DNA of 64,000 nucleotides. Origin: Tetramitus jugosus. Its lineage: Eukaryota; Protista; Heterolobosea. The stretch covers positions 248,001-312,000 of the forward strand of contig OW569365.1 of assembly GCA_937625935.1 (NCBI GenBank), read 5' to 3'. Below, piece by piece: positions 51,186-60,797 of the stretch; position 1 is the stretch's first letter; each line of letters starts with the position of its first letter. Position numbers and translations under genes: made by a program. A model generated the notes under the pieces. The model had not been told where the DNA came from. It saw only the letters and a list, made by a program, of their open reading frames with translations, and ran no database searches.

Positions 51186-52937
51186 TTAAATCGCATATGA
51201 TGACCAAAGCAAGGAATTGAGTATGATTTGTGCTCCTGCTGGCTGATTCTTATTCCAACTCTCTGTTATCAGCTCATTATTCACAGCAAAGAAATTCAAT
51301 ATCACTACTCTTTCCTTGTCGCACCGCACAGCAATTGCTGGTATATTGTCTGGCCATGTTGCCAGTAACTTATTCTTTCCATCTTTTGTGTGCTTGAACG
51401 GTGACCTGCACCTATACTTTCCGAGAATAAATCGGTCCACTCCCTTTACAATCGGATGAGCCTTATCTAACACAATCATTGGATTGTCAGCTGTTGAATA
51501 GTCGTGCTGTGGTGACCCTAGCGCACATGGGCACATGTCGCTGTCAGCCAGTTTTCCCTTCAATGACAACCCACCACTGTTTGCAAACGTAGTGATGACA
51601 AGACCACCATTGTTCTTCTCGACAAACTCGGCCAACAAGTCTCCCAGAACGGTGCGATCCACGAAATTACTACTATTGGAGAATGCCAAGATGGCACTAT
51701 ATTCGAATAGTTTGCTCTTTGTAATCATCTTCTTGTTTGCATTAAACTTGTCAACACATTCGGCATCAATACCCAATCTCTTGACTTCATCATCCACTAG
51801 TTTACGAACATTTTCAATGCGTTCATCTCTGTCGCCACCCAATATCAATATACGAATCTACAATAACCAAACCAGCAATAGATAAAATACACATGAACAC
51901 AATCAATATGCAATTGGTTAATAAATATTGTGACTCATACAAACAATACTACGAAAAAACAACAACATACGGTTCTGCGCGGTGTCGTCACAAACTTGTG
52001 ACTCAACACTGATGAATCTCTCGTGATGTAGAATGAAGCAATATCGAGCATTTCTGACTGAGAAAGAACACACGTCGGTCTCACAAGCTTCACAAAATCC
52101 ACTTGATCCATCAACGGATACCTCACTGCATAAATCAAATCACCCAACACTCGAATCAACAATTGTGTCTGTGGTGACAGCATGGACAACTCTTGTGAAC
52201 TCATATTACTACTGCTGCTCATATTCGTATTTCTACTACTACTACTACTACTATTGCTATGATAATGATGATAATGATGATTGCCTCTCTCACATTGAGT
52301 GACTCCCCAGTTGACAATGGCTTGAAACAGAGCAATCTCTGAAATGTTGATTGCATTGTCACTCACAATAGCATACACATCATCATGACACAAATCATAA
52401 AATGCGTGCAACCGGTTGTCTTCACTGTTCACATCCAACAATCGACTCGCATTGTGCAAAATGTACTTTAGTGAATTGACCTCCAATGTTCTCATGCTGT
52501 ACAGTCGTGCATGAACAAACGTACTGAAAATGTTGTCATCATTGAGACAATGTTCACTCATGTATCTCTCACATGTCTGTTCAAGTGAATTGATGCTGTA
52601 CTTGTTGGCCAAATTTGAAATTTCAATCACGTTGCCCAGTGTAATATTGTCCACAATCTTATCAATGTACATGTATTTGAGAAAGATGAGAAATGCTTCT
52701 ATACTACACTCTCTCTCATCAATCACTGTCATGTTATTATTCGCATTATTATTAGTATTATTATTAGTATTGTTGTTAGTATTATTGTTGCTATTATTAT
52801 TTTGATTGTTGTGAGCGACAGTATCATCATGTGAGAATATGGCTGCTGCTGCAGCTGCTGCTGTCGTTGTTGTGGTAATAGTAGTAGAAGAAGGTGACAA
52901 TGGTGTTGTGATTGAGTGTTCACCACTATTGTGTGAA

Positions 52938-52971
<34 letters not shown>

Positions 52972-53657
52972 GGATGAATGGATGATGATTATTATTGTTA
53001 CTGGTGGTAGTGGCGGTGGTTCTAGTAGTGGTTGTGAATAATGGATTGTAAAACATGTTCCGAAACACTGTACTCCTTGCTAGAATGAGCTTATGAGCAT
53101 AGATGCGTTCATTCTTGACAAGAAAACAAACATCAGGCACCATTTCCAAATTGTTCATTGACCATAACAAGTGTTGTTCCAATGGTGTGACTGCTGATGA
53201 CAATTCAACATTGCTATTATTATTATTGTTGTTGTTGTTGTTGTTGTATTCTTGTTCATCGACTGTATCGCCATTATTTTTATGATCACTCAACATCATG
53301 TTGGATTGACTATTATTATTACTACTACTACTACTACTATTGATAATGTTGTTATGAGTGCCATCCATCATTGTCATCATCATTGAATGATAATTGGTAG
53401 ATGATGAGGAGGGAGATGGAGATGACGATGATGACTGATGTTGTTGCATCTGAGATAGTGAAGAAACAATAGATGTTGTTGCTGTTGTTGGATTGAAAAA
53501 CAAGTGACTATAGGGTGATGACAATGATGGTGAATGAGTTGTCACTTGTTGTTGTTGGAAATGTTGATGATGATGATGATGATGATAGGGATGATAGGAT
53601 GGAGATGTAGAGGAATGATCAGATAATGAAGAGGGTACAGGTGATTGTGGATGATGA

Positions 53658-53689
<32 letters not shown>

Positions 53690-53764
53690 GTGATGATGAT
53701 GATGGAAGTGATGACGCTGATGAGGATGATGCTCATCAGACTCACTTGTCCCGCGATTGTTCAT
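51186..53764 (-). CDS. BTB/POZ-BACK protein with C-terminal alpha/beta (class I GATase/ThuA-like) domain; exons 53764-51971 and 51857-51186
   Basis: DVCFLV...IYAHKLILARSTVFRNMF, FLKYMY, BACK (ISEIALFQAIVNW, VRYPLM). Intron 51970-51858 (GTATGT...TTGTAG) fuses the 220-aa downstream ORF in frame. Confidence 0.8.
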
Positions 53765-54123: not shown

Positions 54124-57100
54124 ATGCAAATACAACAACAACCATTAACAACAACAAATTCTAATGAGAACCAACAGCATCGACAAGGAGAAGTAGTACC
54201 ACCTCCTCCACCCATGACTGCCACTCAATCACTTCCACAATCTCAACCCCCACGGAAAAATAAAAACATTTCATCAGTGAACGAAATCATTAGTGATTCA
54301 AATTCAACTCTGGCAAACAAGCTTGTGAATGATGATGACAATGTGATACCATCTCCACATGCCAACGCTCAATACTATACTCTGCTTCAACAACAACAAA
54401 AATCATTACCATCACAACATCACAACAGAAAGCAAAATCATTACAACATGGTGAAAAATAGTGATCCACACAACAACAGGTCATTGATTTCGAATAGTAA
54501 TCCTTATTATGCATCACTACCATCGTCATCGTCATCATCATCATCAATTGATTCATCATATCCCTATTATCATTCACCTCATCATCATCACCAGCATCAC
54601 CAGCATCCATTATCAGTTGTACCTTCATTCAATAATAACAACCACAACCACAAGAATCATCAATCAAGATCCAATTTCATGAAATGGTTGATTCGTTTTG
54701 TCATGATGCTATTGACAGTCAGCGTAGCCAGTGCATTCAAATCACTGTTCAAATGGATTTGTGCTCGACCTGTGATTCAACACTGGTATTCGTCCTACTG
54801 GTCATCACTCACAAACAACAACAGCAGCAACAACAACAATACGAATCAAACTGTCACTACTGACAACTCGTCTATCAATCAACAACAACAACAACAACAA
54901 GATAACAACAACACGAACAAGAACCATCATCCTACCAATAATCATAATCATAATACTACTAACACTACTGCTAGTCATGAAAAGAGTAACGATCCGTACT
55001 ATGATATGATTGAGTTGAAATTAAAGATGAAATATTTGGAAGATCAACTCTCTGATTGGAAACAATTGACAATGAAGAACATGGATCATCATCATCATCA
55101 TCCACTACCATCCACATCATCATCATCATCATCATTACTCAACAATACGAACAATAACAACAACAATTATATGAATGATCGTCAATTGAATGATATAAAG
55201 ATGGAATTGAGTAAAATGAAGTCGTTACTCAAAGGATACACATCTGCTGCTCGCACCCAATATTATCATCCTCCTTCTGTTCCTCTGACTCATCGTCCAC
55301 AACACGCACAACAACAACAACAAGACGAGACAGCATCATCTATCCATCATCACCCTCACAACAACAACAACAACTATAGCAAGACAAGTAATGAGAGACA
55401 TCATGATGCTCAAATGTACGGTTACAGTGAATCATATGATTTCTCTTCTGGTCAAAAGAAGAAGCAAAAGAACAGAGGTCCATCATCATTGGATCATTAT
55501 GATCACAATGATATGAGTGATAGTGGTGATAGTGATGATTCGTTGGGCATTGGAAAGAGAATCAATGCATTTGAGGACGACACTCAATCACTCATGAACA
55601 ACATGTACAACAGCAACAGTCGATCCCTATTGAATAATACGAATAATAATAATAAGAATTCCGTTGAGCAACATCATACGGCCAATATCCAAACAGTGTT
55701 TGTGGAACCATCGATATCCTCATCGGCATTGTCCAATGCTGTTGTCAATTCTGCACAAGACAAAGATTCCAGTGTTGCGACAATACAACAACAATCTTTG
55801 TCAACAGATGCTCAACAAAATCAAGACTCTCCAGCAACAACGAACATGATTGAACGATCAGATGAAGAATTTGATTATGGCATGTTCGATGGGACGATAC
55901 CTTCGTTTGATGACTTGTTTACGAGTGCTAGCTCTGTCGCACAACAGAACCAAGATCACCCTTGGATGAAAAACTTGTTGAGAACGGAGGAGGATGCACT
56001 CACAGGTGAGTCATCCAATGTGAATGAGACTGCTGCTATGGCTGAAACAGACTCGTATCAGAGTAACAACAAGAATGACTACTTTTTTGGACAGTCTCAT
56101 GATGAGTATCAGGAGTTGGATTCGAGTCAGAGTACGTTTGGTATCAATCAGGTTCAACCATTCAAGACTGAAGATTCAAATCAAGTGGAAGAGTTGACTG
56201 CCATGATGAAACAAACAGAACAAAGCACACCCAAATTCCAAAACTCAAAATTGTTTAAGCTCTTTGAGAAAATTGGCAGTGGAGATGTTTCAATTGACAA
56301 CAATAATCAACTCGTGAATACGAAGGCAAAGAAGAAGAGAAAATCTACTGTTACTGTGAACAAGCGGAAAAAGAAGGTACCTGTGTCAGATTCAGCAGAG
56401 ACGACTCCAAGCATAACCACCGAAACAGCAATCACGACAACAATGGAAACTACGGAAACAATGGAAAAACTAGCGACGGGTTCGTTACCTAATGTTGAAA
56501 ACCAGATGCCTCGAGAAGGACTCTCAGCAACCGAATCTATTCCATCAACCAATGCATTTGAAGTATTTGATACCTATGATTTTGACAATGACGAGAGATA
56601 CCAAAATCTGTTAAAGTTTACTGAGACGAAGGGCACTTTGCAATCATTGGATACATCCAACAAAGCATATGCACTGCTAAAACTCAAAGCAAAATACTAT
56701 ACGAAACATTTTGCCTCTGAAGACAACAAGTTCGACTTTGCAGAGTATTGTCAAGCAAGAAACATAGACATTCCAAGCAATATGGGATCCACGAAACCTG
56801 ATGACAGAGCTTCAACAGGAATCAACGACCAAGCACAAGTAGAAATTGTCCATACATCAGCAACTTTAATGATCGACGAAGAAGGAAACAGTATTGTGTC
56901 GATTGAAGAACCTGATGATACTGTCAACACGAAAGAAGTACAATCTGTAGAAGAGAGCAACACGACTGTAGAAGCGAGTTCAGACACCGATGCACCAAGA
57001 TATCCTGATAGCTATATGACTACCTTGCAGAATCTGACGCAGGGTATCATGCCTAGTGATGTGAAGATTATTGAGACAAAAGTCAACCCCAATGTTATCC

Positions 57101-57354
57101 CAACAGCATCGAAGATGGTCAGGAAATTGAAACCTTGGGAGAGGAAGAAGATCAAGGAGGAGACCGTTCCAGCAAATGAGAGCGCAACCACAAGTGAACC
57201 ACTACCCGCAACAGCTAATAACACCAATTCAGTAGAAGTAGAAAATTGTGCTACTTTAAATGTGGTTCGACGAACAATTGGATTGAAGCGACATTCTGAT
57301 TTCGATTGCAGTTTTGGCCGAAATGTTGAGGAACTTTTTCCATCAGGCAGTTGA
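54124..57354 (+). CDS. Peroxin-like composite protein (PEX14-like core, PEX7-binding-like motif, PEX39/KPWE module)
   Basis: Hydrophobic segment, coiled coil LNDIKMELSKMKSLL, FQNSKLFKLFEKIGSGDVSI, FDTYDFDNDERY...KAKYY and YPDSY...KLKPWE. Confidence 0.65.
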   Translation: MQIQQQPLTTTNSNENQQHRQGEVVPPPPPMTATQSLPQSQPPRKNKNISSVNEIISDSNSTLANKLVNDDDNVIPSPHANAQYYTLLQQQQKSLPSQHHNRKQNHYNMVKNSDPHNNRSLISNSNPYYASLPSSSSSSSSIDSSYPYYHSPHHHHQHHQHPLSVVPSFNNNNHNHKNHQSRSNFMKWLIRFVMMLLTVSVASAFKSLFKWICARPVIQHWYSSYWSSLTNNNSSNNNNTNQTVTTDNSSINQQQQQQQDNNNTNKNHHPTNNHNHNTTNTTASHEKSNDPYYDMIELKLKMKYLEDQLSDWKQLTMKNMDHHHHHPLPSTSSSSSSLLNNTNNNNNNYMNDRQLNDIKMELSKMKSLLKGYTSAARTQYYHPPSVPLTHRPQHAQQQQQDETASSIHHHPHNNNNNYSKTSNERHHDAQMYGYSESYDFSSGQKKKQKNRGPSSLDHYDHNDMSDSGDSDDSLGIGKRINAFEDDTQSLMNNMYNSNSRSLLNNTNNNNKNSVEQHHTANIQTVFVEPSISSSALSNAVVNSAQDKDSSVATIQQQSLSTDAQQNQDSPATTNMIERSDEEFDYGMFDGTIPSFDDLFTSASSVAQQNQDHPWMKNLLRTEEDALTGESSNVNETAAMAETDSYQSNNKNDYFFGQSHDEYQELDSSQSTFGINQVQPFKTEDSNQVEELTAMMKQTEQSTPKFQNSKLFKLFEKIGSGDVSIDNNNQLVNTKAKKKRKSTVTVNKRKKKVPVSDSAETTPSITTETAITTTMETTETMEKLATGSLPNVENQMPREGLSATESIPSTNAFEVFDTYDFDNDERYQNLLKFTETKGTLQSLDTSNKAYALLKLKAKYYTKHFASEDNKFDFAEYCQARNIDIPSNMGSTKPDDRASTGINDQAQVEIVHTSATLMIDEEGNSIVSIEEPDDTVNTKEVQSVEESNTTVEASSDTDAPRYPDSYMTTLQNLTQGIMPSDVKIIETKVNPNVIPTASKMVRKLKPWERKKIKEETVPANESATTSEPLPATANNTNSVEVENCATLNVVRRTIGLKRHSDFDCSFGRNVEELFPSGS

Positions 57355-57440
57355 ACTTTTTCTTCGTCGGACTTTTGACGATTGATCAACAAAAAACAAA
57401 ATAAAAACACAAAGCGACAACAAACGAACGACAACAGAAT

Positions 57441-60400
57441 ATGAGCAAAAAGAGAAAAAATTCGACCGTTTCCCTCAATAATGAGGACAACAATGACATT
57501 CCCACTTTGACAGACGACAATTCAACACCTGCTGCCAAACGATCCAAAAGAAACAACAAGGCAAATGAGAGAGAAACCATTGATCGTTTGATCACAACTA
57601 TTCAAACACCAATCTACAACTTGTTGGTTGCCCATGAAACACACTTGTTTCACTACACGTACTATCCTCAACTCAAAGATCAAGTTGCCTTTCTGCGTGA
57701 TGGTTATTTGGCATTTGTTTCCAACATGGAGCAGCTTCCGGATTTGAATGAATATGTGAAGCAATATCTTGTGAAGAAACCACCGCTCAACAATGGATTC
57801 AACCTGCCTGATGTCATGCTCTGTGAAATCACAAAGATTAAATACTCTTGTTGCAACGTGTTGGCCAAGGGTGTGGCATTTACTCTGAGAACAATCAAAT
57901 TCAAGGTGTTGGAAATTCCACAGCACGATGCATCCAGTGGTAATCATAGTGGTGCTGATGAGAGTAGTGGTGGTGGTGGTGGATTGACGGACAAGCAAAA
58001 AAAATTGATTGGAACAGAGTTTGAATTGGACTATATTGATCATCCGTCGTGCATGGCCAATTATATGGTGTTGAGAGAGTTGTATGAGAACTCTATTGAT
58101 TTTCTGAAAAAATTGAAGAAGAATGACTCGATTCACACCAGTTTCGACAAGAGTTACCACGAGGGAAAAGTGGTAGAGATTGGACCGAGGGACGAATCGA
58201 AACCGTTGAGCCTATGGGAAAATGTTTTGGTCAAGTGGCAAGACGGTGAATCAAGTGACTCGCGTGTCAGCGTATGGGAGATTAAGGAAGTGGGTGATGA
58301 GACCACTGTACTAGCACAGATACCAAAGATGAGCTCTGATCTCACAAAGAAGCTAGAAAAGGCATTTCTTGATTTCTTGAACTCTGAGCTCTTTTTTAAG
58401 GTGCCACTGTACAAGCCATCTGATCCATATCCCCTCTTACTTGCCATCGTTGTCGATAGACTAAAGAGCAACTTTTATAGGCATTTGGAGCATTTTGAAT
58501 CAGACGTCAAACATATTGTCAAAACTATTTCAAAGATATCGACCGAAGGTGCAAAGGTATTGAAAAAATTTGGACAGGAGATTGGTTCAATCATCGGGAA
58601 CACTTCAGGTAGCCTTACGAGCACAACAACCACGAAGGCATCCTCCTCCACATCAAGTACAACAAAAGCCAATTCACTAATCAAAGTGAAGAAAACCGAG
58701 GCAGCGTCATCTGTGCCCACCCTTCTTGATGATGATCTCACCTCTTCACTCTTGAATCTCACGTCCAAACAAGCCAAACCTAAGGAGAGTCTAGAGAAAG
58801 AAGTAAAGACTCCCAAGAAAGAGAAAGAAAAGGGAAAGGAGAAAAGAAAAGAAAAAACGAAAGAAAAGGGCAAAGAGAAAGAAAAAGAGAAAGAAAAGGA
58901 GAAGGGCAAAGAGAAGGAGAAAAAAAAGAAAACTGAAACAAAAAAGGAAGCAAAGAAAGAATCAAAGAAGGAAACAAAGAAAGCAGAGACAACAAAGAAG
59001 GAGACAAAGAAGGATGGCGCAAAAGCTGAAAAACAGAAGAAGAGCCCTAAGAAGGCCTCAAAGGCAAAGCAATCTGAGCCGCAGCCATCAGGCGAGCCAG
59101 CAACTGCAGCCGGCCAACTTCGAAGACCTATTCTTGATGTCGACAACAACGAAAGGATTATTAATTCAATATCAGGCTTCACTGGCGAATCAGTCCCAAA
59201 GAATATTCTTCCCAGCATTCCAAAGATAGCAAAGAAGAACGAACTACAGAAAATTGATCAATCTACAAAACCTGAGAGTGAGAGTAAGGTTGATGAACCA
59301 ATTAATTTTGAGACTGACGAGGTACTCTATGGTGAGAGTGTTCTCTCAACCGAAAAGAAACGAACTGCAAAGAAAGAACCCAACGAAAAGCAAGTCAAAG
59401 AAAAGAAAGCAAAGCCAAAGACAGAGAAAAAAGAAAGAGAAAAGAAGAGTAAGAAGGACAAAGAGCAAAAACAGCCAGCAGATCTCAAGCTAAAAATCAA
59501 ACTTACGGCTCCAAATGCCACTGAAACTGAACCTGCCAGCACAACTATAATCAGTATCCCCGCGACTTCCTTCTCCATGATCAATGATCACAGAGAAGAG
59601 GAAGTAGACGATTTCGATGGAGGTTTTGGAAGTGTTGATCGTGAAGTTCCATTCGTGCCTCCTCCTTCAATCCTCGAAGAGCAAAGTCAGATGATTACAG
59701 ATGAGGAAGAACCTCAACATGTCGAAGAGTTTGGAGCTCCAAATGTTGAAACAGTCGTCCCTCCTGTTAAGGTTAAGTTTTCTATGGCTCCTGTGGCGGC
59801 AGTGACTCATGCTATTCCTAAGGAGAGTGCTCCTACGATCAAACGCCCTCATTTGAACTTCTCATTAAATTTGAAGAAGAAAGATCTGGGGATGGACATT
59901 GTTGATCAACATATGGAAGACGTATTCGAATTATCTGATGATTCTAACCAGCACGTACATCCAACAGAGATTGTATCCAATGAGGATAATTTGAACGAAA
60001 TTAATGTCTCCTTAGTCACCAAGAGCGATTCAGATATGATCCAAGTGGATATGACAACTAATGATGATGTTGATCCGATTCAACAGAAGCAGTATCAAAA
60101 ATGGCAGCAAGCACTTGTCAATTGGCAACAACATAATACAGCTTCTACTAAGACATCAGACTATGAGTTGCGCGAAGAACCTATACTCAGCGAACAATCT
60201 CCATTGTATCATAGCTCTGTTACACTAACTACCAGTGTGAATCGTGCACCATTTATCAATCAGGAGTATTATGCTCCAATGCGAAAGATGACTAACAGTA
60301 CACATAGCTCAAATGCTCTGTGCTGTTTCAAATTTCACAAGAATTTGAGTAATGACACCAGCGTTTCCGCTCATAATCTGATTCTTCACTCCTTCTGCAT

Positions 60401-60797
60401 AGCGTTGAGCACTGATGAAAACATGATGACAGATGAGCATGAAGATCTACAACAACAACTATCAATCAGCCTTTCATGTACCATGAATGAACCGCGGAGA
60501 CTAAAGTTACACTCATTGCACTATGACGTTACTGAGGCCGTTCGTCTCTCAAGCAACCCAATGCTCATGTTCCGCCATCCACATCCAGAAAGACTTGCGC
60601 GACTGAGAGATCGATACGGATTCTTGATTGCTGATGGTTTCAAGTGGTATGCAGATGGATTCTACTTTAGAGCACGAAAAAATCAAACAATTGCCCAAAC
60701 AGAATGCTCATTGATCGATATTGTGTGCATTCATGACACAATTGAAGTCTCATTCTCCCTGCCCACCCAATCTGTACCCTATACATTTCGACTGTAA
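57441..60797 (+). CDS. BRWD/PHIP-related chromatin protein lacking WD40 repeats, with degenerate bromodomain and KE-rich linker
   Basis: YYPQLKDQVAFLRDGY and LWENVLVKWQDG..DSRVSVWEI (BRWD/PHIP central domain); YPLLLAIVVDRLKSNFYRH..F..DVKHI (bromodomain-like C-terminal half). Confidence 0.65.
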   Translation: MSKKRKNSTVSLNNEDNNDIPTLTDDNSTPAAKRSKRNNKANERETIDRLITTIQTPIYNLLVAHETHLFHYTYYPQLKDQVAFLRDGYLAFVSNMEQLPDLNEYVKQYLVKKPPLNNGFNLPDVMLCEITKIKYSCCNVLAKGVAFTLRTIKFKVLEIPQHDASSGNHSGADESSGGGGGLTDKQKKLIGTEFELDYIDHPSCMANYMVLRELYENSIDFLKKLKKNDSIHTSFDKSYHEGKVVEIGPRDESKPLSLWENVLVKWQDGESSDSRVSVWEIKEVGDETTVLAQIPKMSSDLTKKLEKAFLDFLNSELFFKVPLYKPSDPYPLLLAIVVDRLKSNFYRHLEHFESDVKHIVKTISKISTEGAKVLKKFGQEIGSIIGNTSGSLTSTTTTKASSSTSSTTKANSLIKVKKTEAASSVPTLLDDDLTSSLLNLTSKQAKPKESLEKEVKTPKKEKEKGKEKRKEKTKEKGKEKEKEKEKEKGKEKEKKKKTETKKEAKKESKKETKKAETTKKETKKDGAKAEKQKKSPKKASKAKQSEPQPSGEPATAAGQLRRPILDVDNNERIINSISGFTGESVPKNILPSIPKIAKKNELQKIDQSTKPESESKVDEPINFETDEVLYGESVLSTEKKRTAKKEPNEKQVKEKKAKPKTEKKEREKKSKKDKEQKQPADLKLKIKLTAPNATETEPASTTIISIPATSFSMINDHREEEVDDFDGGFGSVDREVPFVPPPSILEEQSQMITDEEEPQHVEEFGAPNVETVVPPVKVKFSMAPVAAVTHAIPKESAPTIKRPHLNFSLNLKKKDLGMDIVDQHMEDVFELSDDSNQHVHPTEIVSNEDNLNEINVSLVTKSDSDMIQVDMTTNDDVDPIQQKQYQKWQQALVNWQQHNTASTKTSDYELREEPILSEQSPLYHSSVTLTTSVNRAPFINQEYYAPMRKMTNSTHSSNALCCFKFHKNLSNDTSVSAHNLILHSFCIALSTDENMMTDEHEDLQQQLSISLSCTMNEPRRLKLHSLHYDVTEAVRLSSNPMLMFRHPHPERLARLRDRYGFLIADGFKWYADGFYFRARKNQTIAQTECSLIDIVCIHDTIEVSFSLPTQSVPYTFRL

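What the first reader, a model, noticed from the sequence alone, without database searches (positions are those of the whole stretch)
54124..57354. Possible all-in-one PTS2 import peroxin: PEX14-like core + PEX7 co-receptor motif + PEX39/KPWE module
Seen, N to C: a hydrophobic/amphipathic segment (about 54673-54800) containing WLIRF and WYSSY (WxxxF/Y-type); coiled coils ending LNDIKMELSKMKSLL; FQNSKLFKLFEKIGSGDVSI (about 56236-56295); a helical FDTYDFDNDERY...LLKLKAKYY...FDFAEY domain (about 56550-56750); and PRYPDSY...G..P..VK.I...NP...KLKPWE (about 56990-57140). Known from recall: the coil resembles the PEX14 ELKSEINSLKGLL segment. The NSKLFKLF...G.G.V motif resembles the PEX7-binding helix of PEX5L/PEX18/20/21 (human NSEFLKFVRQIGEGQVSL). 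The last two elements match PEX39-type proteins and the KPWE region of plant PEX14, and KPWE binds PEX7. No PEX14 N-terminal PEX5-binding domain and no TPRs are visible. Inference: one membrane-anchored chain may supply both PEX7-contacting modules, which would be an undescribed organisation of PTS2 import.
Basis: partly seen in the sequence, partly recalled or inferred. Interest (0 to 1): 0.82.

Follow-up and report, generated by a model that had tools for sequence, protein, structure and literature searches.

The report
Membrane peroxin with three PEX7-binding elements
This gene encodes a probably membrane-anchored peroxisome import protein, found in heterolobosean amoebae, whose single chain carries a PEX39-type KPWE module and a co-receptor-type PEX7-binding helix; it may be the docking protein (PEX14) reported missing from Naegleria.

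Summary

It belongs to a conserved family of at least 8 divergent homologues. The named ones are from Acrasis kona and Naegleria gruberi. Shared order:
- a short N-terminal motif
- one hydrophobic segment
- helical/coiled segments ending in DLRxELAxIKGML
- an SFDxLF..NPY block
- a PEX7-binding box
- a small helical domain (Pfam HTH_76)
- a DUF5572/KPWE_dom module ending in KPWE

Support for the parts:
- **KPWE module:** 8 of 10 members match Pfam KPWE_dom (best E 1.7e-10).
- **PEX7 box:** a profile of the box finds one significant hit in the whole PDB, yeast Pex21 from the Pex7-PTS2 crystal (E 0.0017).
- **Genome context:** the genome has PEX7 and a thiolase with a canonical PTS2. Its PEX5 shows no PEX7 box and no tryptophan in its N-terminal half. 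I found no Pex14_N domain and no other PEX7-box gene.

Homology of the membrane/coil part to PEX14 could not be shown with any tool.

PEX14-PEX39 fusions outside opisthokonts are already published (Chen et al. 2025). The new features are the added co-receptor box, the missing N-domain and the link to the "missing" heterolobosean PEX14. PEX7 binding and localisation are untested.

Verdict: a new variant of a known kind; interest about 0.6.

The parts
54124..57354 (+). Whole gene: single uninterrupted ORF of 1076 aa, with long low-complexity linkers (poly-N/Q/H/S/T) between conserved blocks
   Evidence: ORF list. All conserved blocks lie in one frame. Contigs from RNA libraries tile 55709-57378 without splice joints, and an oligo-dT library contig ends at 57378, 24 nt past the stop.
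54343..54390 (+). N-terminal family motif (V/I)IPxPHxxAxYYTLL, aa 74-89; function unknown; not a Pex14_N domain
   Evidence: Conserved in W, P0001, P0004, P0009, P0013 and P0024. Short helix of low confidence in AF2. No Pex14_N hit.
54679..54747 (+). Predicted single membrane-spanning segment, aa 186-208
   Evidence: Only hydropathy peak in the protein (KD19 1.58). Each full-length homologue has exactly one peak at the aligned position (1.5-2.1). AF2 helix with pLDDT 80-93.
54994..55254 (+). Two helical, coiled-coil-like segments, aa ~291-321 and 347-377; the second ends in the family motif D(L/I)(K/R)xEL(A/S)x(I/M)K(G/S)(M/L)L
   Evidence: AF2 helices with pLDDT 57-76. The motif is one of the best conserved blocks. 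The profile of this region hits only coiled-coil proteins in the PDB.
55858..55983 (+). Acidic/aromatic block FDYxMFDGxxPSFDxLF..A...(N/H)P(W/Y/F)xxxL, aa 579-620; a possible relic of a receptor N-terminal region, which is an untested idea
   Evidence: Conserved in 8 members. No significant match in the PDB or to this genome's own PEX5 N-terminus.
56224..56304 (+). PEX7-binding box of the PEX18/20/21/PEX5L co-receptor type, aa 701-727 (helix plus short hairpin)
   Evidence: Family profile A5 against the PDB: top and only significant hit is 3w15_B (Pex21), E 0.0017. Pfam PF25098 E 0.047-0.078. AF2 pLDDT 70-89. Foldseek ranks 3w15_B sixth, which is not significant. It is the only significant match to A5 in the genome.
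56560..56760 (+). Small four-helix domain, Pfam HTH_76 (PF25871), aa 813-879; probably the extra region 'X' of long PEX39 proteins
   Evidence: AF2 pLDDT 81-94. PF25871 is precomputed on the homologues P0001 and P0024. The same domain occurs twice, followed by KPWE_dom, in a Gonapodya protein. No clear known fold, best Z 4.2.
57001..57150 (+). DUF5572/KPWE_dom module, aa 960-1009: amphipathic stretch YPDSYMTTLQNLTQG, linker, then KLKPWERKK (KPWE = aa 1003-1006, nt 57130-57141)
   Evidence: PF17733: 23.7-25.5 bits by hmmscan and 30.4 bits, above the 27-bit cut-off, in the six-frame search. Eight of 10 family members match, best E 1.7e-10. K-P-W is invariant in 10 of 10.

Best explanation
The gene encodes a peroxin of the PEX14-PEX39 fusion class, in a form typical of heterolobosean amoebae. 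I will call the protein W.

**Predicted layout**
- One predicted membrane helix (aa ~186-208) and helical, coiled-coil-like segments probably anchor W in the peroxisomal membrane.
- By analogy with PEX14's N-in/C-out topology, about 850 mostly disordered residues would face the cytosol.

**Three elements on that tail that known biology says contact PEX7**
1. A Pex21/PEX5L-type PEX7-binding box (aa 701-727). In other organisms it sits on the PTS2-loaded top face of the PEX7 propeller.
2. The amphipathic helix of a DUF5572 domain (aa ~960-975). In PEX39 it binds the same face.
3. A KPWE motif (aa 1003-1006), which binds the bottom face.

**Proposed mechanism (inferred)**
This genome's PEX5 lacks a PEX7 box, and no other gene has one. 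The protein would therefore serve as the membrane-tethered partner of PEX7. It captures and stabilises PEX7-PTS2 cargo at the organelle, which is the PEX39 role. It also supplies the co-receptor-type helix that soluble PEX5L/PEX18/20/21 supply elsewhere. PEX7 would then be passed to or from the translocon.

**Shown here:** the ORF, the conserved family, the domain and motif homologies, and the presence of PEX7, PTS2 cargo and a box-less PEX5.

**Inferred:** membrane insertion and topology, peroxisomal location, actual PEX7 binding, descent of the membrane part from PEX14, and the order of events.
For: **The gene and its family**
- Intact ORF.
- An exhaustive HMMER search found 18 relatives, at least 8 with the same block order at 17-37% identity.
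- Named members are an Acrasis kona 'peroxisomal membrane protein' and a Naegleria gruberi predicted protein.

**KPWE module**
- KPWE_dom scores above its cut-off in the six-frame search and matches 8 of 10 members, best E 1.7e-10.
- KPWE motifs bind PEX7 experimentally in PEX39 and PEX13 (PMC12339391, PMC12173945).

**PEX7 box**
- The box profile's only significant PDB hit is Pex21 from the Pex7-Pex21-PTS2 crystal, E 0.0017.
- The one invariant residue of the box (Leu710) aligns with the Pex21 Phe at chain index 49. That would be F236 if the 101-residue chain starts at residue 188, which is my inference. Chen et al. single out F236, together with PEX5 F215 and PEX39 L21.
- AF2 models the box as a confident helix plus hairpin.

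**HTH_76 and PEX39**
- HTH_76 followed by KPWE_dom also occurs in a chytrid protein. This matches the 'X + DUF5572' architecture of long PEX39 (PMC12339391).

**Membrane part**
- One conserved hydrophobic peak per member, and a confident AF2 helix.

**Genome context**
- PEX7 is present: 3w15_A, E 2.4e-63.
- A thiolase begins with ..RLHILQQHL.., a canonical PTS2.
- PEX5 is confirmed. I saw no PEX7 box, no Trp and no Cys in its N-terminal half.
- No other genomic match to the box profile.
- No Pex14_N anywhere.

**Literature**
[quoted passage not shown] - A PEX7 box in N. fowleri PEX5 is 'less certain' (PMC9512073).

**Expression**
- The 3' 1.6 kb is present, unspliced, in soil metatranscriptome contigs.
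Against: - No tool linked the membrane/coil part to PEX14: Pex14_N and PEX14-like_2nd were absent, and the PDB, word and atlas searches were empty.
- The PEX7-box evidence is moderate. It is 21 bits from a 50-position profile. Pfam PEX18_PEX21_C is below threshold, and only this one family member hits it.
- A membrane-fixed co-receptor has no precedent. Known co-receptors shuttle and carry a conserved Cys and WxxxF/Y motifs, which this family lacks.
- The hydrophobic segment is only moderately hydrophobic (KD 1.58) and contains an Arg.
- The DUF5572 amphipathic helix has low AF2 confidence here. It is deleted in the closest homologue P0001 and absent in P0004/P0005.
- The N. gruberi homologue has a degenerate box and no KPWE in or just downstream of the gene, so the full set of modules is not universal.
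- The six-frame HMM searches that found no Pex14_N or PEX13_N are weak tests in a genome that has some introns.
- RNA contigs do not link the 5' half to the 3' half.
Confidence: 0.6

Rival explanations
1. It is simply the local version of the already described PEX14-PEX39 fusion. The KPWE domain does the PEX39 job, as proposed for plant PEX14. The 'PEX7 box' is a conserved amphipathic helix with another role, such as binding another peroxin or regulating the protein itself. Its likeness to Pex21 would be convergent or due to chance.
For: PEX14-PEX39 fusions outside opisthokonts are published (PMC12339391, PMC13591263). The box evidence is only E 0.0017 against the PDB and below threshold in Pfam. 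The N. gruberi member has a degenerate box.
Against: The box is among the most conserved blocks of the family. Its single significant PDB hit out of 177,635 sequences is exactly the PEX7-binding segment of Pex21. PEX5 in this genome offers no alternative box, and no other gene does.
Confidence: 0.22
2. It is not membrane-anchored. It would be a soluble PEX20-PEX39-like PTS2 co-receptor or chaperone, and the hydrophobic stretch would be an oligomerisation or peripheral membrane-binding helix.
For: The hydrophobic peak is modest (KD 1.58, with an Arg). Some relatives in the databases lack the segment (P0012, P0016, P0011, P0015).
Against: Every full-length member has one hydrophobic peak at the aligned place, up to KD 2.1. 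The members without it look like fragments or partial gene calls from short metagenome contigs. The family lacks the conserved Cys and WxxxF/Y motifs that shuttling receptors need.
Confidence: 0.1
3. It is a non-peroxisomal, largely disordered protein in which short peroxin-like motifs occur by chance.
For: More than half of the protein is low-complexity sequence. AF2 is confident for only about a third of the modelled parts. The complex prediction gave no answer.
Against: Three independent peroxin-specific signals lie in a conserved order across homologues only 17-37% identical to it. The chytrid protein carrying HTH_76 plus KPWE_dom ties the C-terminal third to PEX39.
Confidence: 0.04

Closest known systems
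PEX14-PEX39 fusion proteins of non-opisthokonts, e.g. Arabidopsis PEX14 with a C-terminal PEX39-like region (Chen et al. 2025, PMC12339391; PMC13591263)
   Same: A membrane protein with one hydrophobic segment, a coiled coil and a long disordered C-terminal tail. The tail ends in a DUF5572/KPWE_dom module: an amphipathic helix, about 40 residues of linker, then KPWE/D.
   Different: No Pex14_N PEX5-binding domain. An additional Pex21/PEX5L-type PEX7 box and an HTH_76 domain lie upstream of the KPWE domain. Homology of the membrane part to PEX14 was not demonstrable here.
PEX39 (human C6ORF226, yeast Yjr012c), including the long fungal/invertebrate form with extra region 'X'
   Same: A DUF5572 domain ending in (R/K)PWE, preceded here by the HTH_76 domain. 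In a Gonapodya protein (P0017) that domain also precedes KPWE_dom. The expected function is two-sided binding of PEX7.
   Different: PEX39 is a small soluble cytosolic protein. Here the module is the C-terminal third of a 1076-aa protein with a predicted membrane anchor.
PTS2 co-receptors PEX18/PEX21 (S. cerevisiae), PEX20 (fungi), PEX5L (animals, plants, kinetoplastids)
   Same: The PEX7-binding box. The family consensus EPKFKKSKLFxF(I/L)xx(I/L)xSG aligns with Pex21 ..ESKLSESKFIQLMRNISSGDVTL...
   Different: Co-receptors are soluble and shuttle. They carry an N-terminal Cys for ubiquitination and WxxxF/Y motifs. This family has no conserved Cys or Trp motifs and has a membrane segment.
PEX17 / PEX33 (fungal PEX14-like docking components)
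   Same: PEX17 is a PEX14-like protein with a single membrane helix and a coiled coil but no PEX14 N-domain (PMC8172628). That is a precedent for an N-domain-less docking component involved in PTS2 import.
   Different: PEX17 works next to a canonical PEX14 and has no PEX7-binding or KPWE modules. No sequence relation to it was tested here.

Membership tests
PEX14 | N-terminal Pex14_N domain (PF04695) that binds PEX5 WxxxF/Y motifs | tested here: not met
   No Pex14_N hit in the ORF at E<=1, in any of 10 family members, or in the six-frame search of the whole genome.
PEX14 | Single hydrophobic membrane segment followed by a coiled coil and a disordered C-terminal tail | tested here: met
   One hydropathy peak per member at the aligned position. 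AF2 gives a helix with pLDDT 80-93, then two helices of 31 residues each. The tail is mostly disordered. This is architecture only, from prediction.
PEX14 | Detectable sequence homology to the central region of PEX14 | tested here: inconclusive
   No PEX14 hit in any of the following: single-sequence and profile PDB searches, the word-based search with a 7-sequence alignment, the feature search, and PF23020 PEX14-like_2nd. No canonical PEX14 sequence could be obtained for a direct profile-profile test.
PEX14 | Peroxisomal membrane location in the docking complex with PEX13 | not testable with these tools
   Needs localisation and interaction experiments.
PEX39 / DUF5572 (Pfam KPWE_dom PF17733) | Match to the KPWE_dom profile | tested here: met
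   30.4 bits (cut-off 27) in the six-frame search and 23.7-25.5 bits by hmmscan. Eight of 10 family members match, best E 1.7e-10.
PEX39 / DUF5572 (Pfam KPWE_dom PF17733) | (R/K)PWE motif at the C-terminal end of the domain | tested here: met
   KLKPWERKK at aa 1001-1009. K-P-W is invariant in 10 of 10 aligned members. The fourth residue is E in most and M or L in three.
PEX39 / DUF5572 (Pfam KPWE_dom PF17733) | Amphipathic helix about 40 residues upstream of the motif | tested here: inconclusive
   The Pfam match covers model positions 2-48 (aa 960-1007), and most members share PPYPxSF...L..G. However, AF2 confidence is low here (helix at aa 963-972, pLDDT about 40), and the stretch is absent from P0001, P0004 and P0005.
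PEX39 / DUF5572 (Pfam KPWE_dom PF17733) | Small soluble cytosolic protein | tested here: not met
   1076 aa with a predicted membrane helix. It is better described as a fusion that contains a PEX39 module.
PEX39 / DUF5572 (Pfam KPWE_dom PF17733) | Binds PEX7 | not testable with these tools
   Needs a binding assay or a well-aligned multimer model. The one complex job returned no verdict; see Tried and rejected.
PTS2 co-receptors (PEX18/20/21, PEX5L) | PEX7-binding box | tested here: met
   Family profile against the PDB: 3w15_B (Pex21) E 0.0017, 21.3 bits, the only hit below E 0.5. Pfam PF25098 E 0.047-0.078, below its cut-off. Moderate strength.
PTS2 co-receptors (PEX18/20/21, PEX5L) | Conserved N-terminal cysteine for mono-ubiquitination and recycling | tested here: not met
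   No conserved Cys in any conserved block of the family alignment.
PTS2 co-receptors (PEX18/20/21, PEX5L) | WxxxF/Y motifs; soluble shuttling protein | tested here: not met
   WLIRF is inside the membrane helix, and WYSSY lies in an insertion absent from the aligned homologues. A membrane segment is predicted. Conserved F/Y-rich blocks exist (FDxxIF, SFDxLF), but their role is unknown.

The most novel reading that the evidence does not exclude
In Heterolobosea the PTS2 pathway may run without any soluble co-receptor. The docking peroxin itself would carry the co-receptor helix on a flexible tether of several hundred residues, together with a built-in PEX39. PEX7 and its cargo would then be captured, stabilised and handed to the pore by one membrane protein. 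In parallel, the classical PEX5 WxxxF/Y to PEX14 N-domain docking contact would have been lost on both sides. This family would then be the 'missing' PEX14 of Naegleria and its relatives.
Probability: 0.3. Interest if true: 0.8.

Novelty: new variant of a known kind. Interest (0 to 1): 0.6.

Why it matters
**An open question becomes testable.** Comparative studies found no PEX13 or PEX14 in three Naegleria species and asked how import works without them (PMC7549135). This family, which includes a Naegleria gruberi and an Acrasis kona protein, is a concrete candidate for the missing docking component.

**A natural experiment on the PTS2 cycle.** Three elements lie on one membrane-bound chain: the co-receptor helix, the PEX39 helix and the KPWE motif. 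Elsewhere these sit on three different proteins and are thought to hand PEX7 from one to the next. If the function is confirmed, a co-receptor would not need to shuttle. That bears on current pore and hand-over models (PMC12173945, PMC12339391).

**Limits.** The PEX14-PEX39 fusion as such is already known, so the finding is an extension, not a new kind of system. All functional statements are predictions.

Tried and rejected
**Complex prediction**
- Complex prediction with PEX7 (aa 1-320), the thiolase PTS2 peptide and W aa 693-745 returned 'no answer' (score 0.05, controls not run). It is not used for or against binding.

**Searches for PEX14 homology of the membrane/coil part (all empty)**
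- PDB with P0001:85-290.
- PDB with the 7-sequence profile, which found only coiled-coil proteins.
- Word-based search with alignment A6 at E<=10.
- Atlas feature search.
- PF23020 PEX14-like_2nd.

**Word-based homologue searches**
- With W 680-1030 and with P0001:415-755 these found only P0001, or nothing. The family appeared only with the exhaustive HMMER search.

**Fold searches with the C-terminal model**
- Foldseek against the PDB gave nothing significant; 3w15_B ranked sixth at E 5.
- VIA-wide gave a best Z of 4.2 for the HTH domain.
- The atlas search gave TM <= 0.24.
- The atlas feature search with the HTH domain gave no usable hit.

**SFDxLF..NPY block as a relic of the PEX5/PEX20 N-terminal box**
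- No significant PDB hit. hhalign to this genome's own PEX5 N-terminus aligned only NNPISNAI (E 0.16). I keep this as an untested idea.

**The 291-aa KPWE protein on contig 15 as a short paralogue**
- hhalign aligned only the hydrophobic segment (probability below 1%). Rejected.

**Other**
- Peroxin-13_N (PF04088) and PEX18_PEX21_C (PF25098) six-frame searches were empty. These are weak tests.
- Looking for a KPWE exon downstream of the N. gruberi gene found none within 1.3 kb.
- PEX5 has an intron. I searched its two exons separately by reference and did not join them.


Full report
**1. What is there**

Window 54124-57354 (+) is one uninterrupted ORF of 1076 aa; I call the protein W. G+C is about 0.36-0.41 and unremarkable. 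The window is part of a 26.35-Mb, 56-contig eukaryotic assembly. Earlier notes of this scan mention ciliary genes and peroxisome-targeted enzymes in that genome.

The hydrophobic stretch (aa 186-208) is the only Kyte-Doolittle peak above 1.4 in the protein.

AlphaFold2 on aa 67-380, with a 7-sequence alignment, gives:
- a confident helix there (pLDDT 80-93);
- two further helices of 31 residues each (aa ~291-321 and 347-377, pLDDT 57-76), the second carrying LNDIKMELSKMKSLL.

AlphaFold2 on aa 690-1012 gives:
- a helix plus hairpin for the NSKLFKLFEKIGSGDVSI box (pLDDT 70-89);
- a four-helix domain for aa ~811-879 (pLDDT 81-94);
- disorder elsewhere.

**2. It is a conserved family, not a chance set of motifs**

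Word-based searches found a single homologue, P0001 (755 aa, from a metagenome, 41% identity).

An exhaustive HMMER search of 1.84 billion representatives, using the box-to-KPWE alignment, found 18 proteins. At least eight share the full block order at 17-37% identity to W:
- an N-terminal IPxP..YYTL motif;
- one hydrophobic segment;
- DLRxELAxIKGML;
- NIETxxV;
- FDDxIFxGxxPSFDxLF..A..NPY;
- EPKF(K/Q)KSKLFxF(I/L)xx(I/L)xSG;
- the helical domain;
- PPYPxSF...G..IKxIxDKPxNPNxKPTPS...KxKPWEKKK.

Each full-length member has exactly one hydrophobic peak, at the aligned place.

Source names place the family in Heterolobosea:
- P0008 is an Acrasis kona 'peroxisomal membrane protein' (KAL0483618.1).
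- P0024 is a Naegleria gruberi predicted protein (XP_002674382.1).

The window's organism is therefore probably a heterolobosean or a close relative. Contigs nearly identical to the gene occur in soil metatranscriptomes.

**3. The C-terminal third is a PEX39 module**

Pfam KPWE_dom (PF17733, formerly DUF5572) matches aa 960-1007. It scores 23.7-25.5 bits by hmmscan and 30.4 bits, above the 27-bit cut-off, in the six-frame genome search. Eight of ten family members match, best E 1.7e-10.

The helical domain upstream is Pfam HTH_76 (PF25871). That annotation is precomputed on P0001 and, weakly, on the Naegleria protein. The family is not in the local Pfam copy.

A Gonapodya prolifera protein (P0017) has two such domains followed by a strong KPWE_dom (E 4.7e-20). 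This matches the statement of Chen et al. that many PEX39 orthologues have an extra region 'X' besides DUF5572 (PMC12339391). I equate X with HTH_76 by inference.

The fold has no clear solved relative (best Z 4.2).

Experimentally, the (R/K)PWE motif of PEX39 and PEX13 binds the bottom of the PEX7 propeller. The PEX39 amphipathic helix binds the top, next to the PTS2 (PMC12339391, PMC12173945).

**4. The PEX7 box**

Pfam PEX18_PEX21_C gives only E 0.047-0.078 for aa 693-734, and no other family member hits it.

I built a 10-sequence profile of the box and searched all 177,635 distinct PDB sequences. The top and only significant hit is 3w15_B (E 0.0017, 21.3 bits); the next best hit is E 0.54. 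3w15_B is yeast Pex21 as crystallised with Pex7 and a PTS2.

The aligned Pex21 stretch is ..ESKLSESKFIQLMRNISSGDVTL.. The one invariant residue of the family box (Leu710 of W) pairs with the Phe at chain index 49. That is F236 if the 101-residue chain begins at residue 188 (my inference). Chen et al. single out F236, beside PEX5 F215 and PEX39 L21, as the conserved hydrophobic contact.

Foldseek also lists 3w15_B (rank 6, 30% identity over 37 columns), but not significantly.

I regard the box as a real member of the PEX7-binding-box class, with moderate confidence.

**5. Genome context**

- **PEX7** is present. It is L019:1342-2496, 384 aa, with an Asp/Glu tail; 3w15_A scores E 2.4e-63.
- **A PTS2 cargo** is present. 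A thiolase starts ..NRRLHILQQHLSP.., a canonical R-L-x5-H-L PTS2.
- **PEX5** is present on contig 29, in two exons that I searched separately and did not join. The TPR half hits PTS1 receptors at about 1e-41. Its N-terminal part shows no Trp, no Cys and no PEX7 box.
- **No other PEX7 box.** The box profile finds nothing else significant in the genome. The second hit, E 0.075, is the tail of a multi-pass channel-like protein.
- **No Pex14_N, Peroxin-13_N or PEX14-like_2nd** match was found in six frames. These are weak negative tests.

This agrees with published surveys. [quoted passage not shown] A PEX7 box in N. fowleri PEX5 is 'less certain' (PMC9512073).

**6. What could not be shown**

The 'PEX14-like core' is supported only by architecture. 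None of the searches I could run connects aa 67-380, or its family profile, to PEX14.

It is a lead only.

PEX14 ancestry is the most economical reading for two reasons. Chen et al. report that PEX39-related sequences outside opisthokonts are fused to PEX14. PEX17 is a precedent for an N-domain-less PEX14-like protein. I put it at about 0.6.

The complex prediction returned no verdict and is not evidence either way.

**7. Transcript evidence**

Only assembled contigs of RNA libraries were available.
- Pieces from three metatranscriptomes tile 55709-57378 with no splice joints.
- One 666-nt contig spans 56476-57141, covering the HTH domain and KPWE.
- An oligo-dT library contig ends 24 nt after the stop, before the next gene at 57441.
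- The low-complexity 5' half is barely covered, so a single full-length transcript is not demonstrated.

**8. Mechanism proposed**

With PEX14-like N-in/C-out topology (an analogy), the long tail would sit in the cytosol. It would present to PEX7 a bottom-face anchor (KPWE) and two alternative top-face helices (the DUF5572 helix and the Pex21-type box).

In yeast and human these three elements sit on PEX39, on the co-receptor and, for a second KPWE, on PEX13. They exchange in sequence (PMC12173945, PMC12339391).

Here the exchange between the PEX39-type helix and the co-receptor-type helix could be intramolecular and take place at the membrane. The tether between the membrane helix and the box is about 350-490 residues, depending on the member, and could reach into a pore.

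PEX5 in this genome lacks WxxxF/Y motifs, and the docking protein lacks the domain that binds them. This suggests a co-ordinated loss of that contact. All of this is inference.

**9. Variation within the family**

- P0001, P0004 and P0005 lack the DUF5572 amphipathic stretch but keep KPWE.
- The N. gruberi protein keeps the N-motif, membrane segment, coil and HTH. Its box is degenerate, and it has no KPWE in the gene or within 1.3 kb downstream.
- Several short database entries without a membrane segment look like fragments.

**10. Verdict**

It is a new variant of a known kind (the PEX14-PEX39 fusion), with a co-receptor-type box and no N-domain. It is a good candidate for the PEX14 that has been missing from Heterolobosea.

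Noticed in passing
L002:1471-2346 (-) = G000 contig 15, about 479.9-480.8 kb: A second, unrelated-looking 291-aa ORF with one strong hydrophobic segment (KD 2.08) and a C-terminal ..SKLKPWERKK (KPWE_dom E 0.025-0.13). It may be another membrane-anchored PEX7-binding protein. hhalign shows no paralogy with the main family beyond the hydrophobic helix.
   Followed up: partly
L055 (G000 contig 29, 24888-27904), minus strand, ORFs 2447-2905 and 1194-2399: PEX5 in two exons. The TPR half is typical (..SWNKLGATHAN..). The N-terminal part shows no Trp and no Cys (hence no WxxxF/Y motif), and I saw no PEX7 box. The stretch MFRDLVGGDKG...NNPISNAIDRF has a Lys where, from recall, other PEX5 proteins have the ubiquitinated Cys.
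   Followed up: partly
L019:1342-2496 (+) (G000 contig 6): PEX7 orthologue (3w15_A E 2.4e-63) with a C-terminal tail of about 70 aa that is about half Asp/Glu.
   Followed up: partly
L059:1042-2481 (-) (G000 contig 4): A 479-aa thiolase with a canonical PTS2 (RLHILQQHL) after a poly-N/Q leader. Another thiolase-like ORF (L057) ends in -AKL, a PTS1-like tripeptide.
   Followed up: partly
L066:3001-5391 (Naegleria gruberi GG738884.1, XP_002674382.1 = P0024): The Naegleria member of the family (796 aa) has the N-motif, membrane segment, coil and HTH_76. Its PEX7 box is degenerate, and it has no KPWE in the gene or within 1.3 kb downstream. It may be the 'missing' Naegleria PEX14-like protein.
   Followed up: partly
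P0017 (Gonapodya prolifera KXS13862.1): A chytrid protein with two HTH_76-like domains followed by a strong KPWE_dom (E 4.7e-20). It is probably the long fungal form of PEX39, and it ties HTH_76 to PEX39 biology.
   Followed up: partly
window 51935-53764 (-) and 57441-60797 (+): Flanking genes. One is a BTB/BACK protein with long poly-H/Q/N/T tracts. The other is an 1118-aa protein with weak BRWD/PHIP ancillary-domain and bromodomain matches and a Lys/Glu-rich repeat region.
   Followed up: no
window 55709-57700: Near-identical (95-100%) contigs occur in several soil and sediment metatranscriptomes from different studies. The organism, or close strains of it, therefore seems to be a common soil inhabitant.
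   Followed up: no
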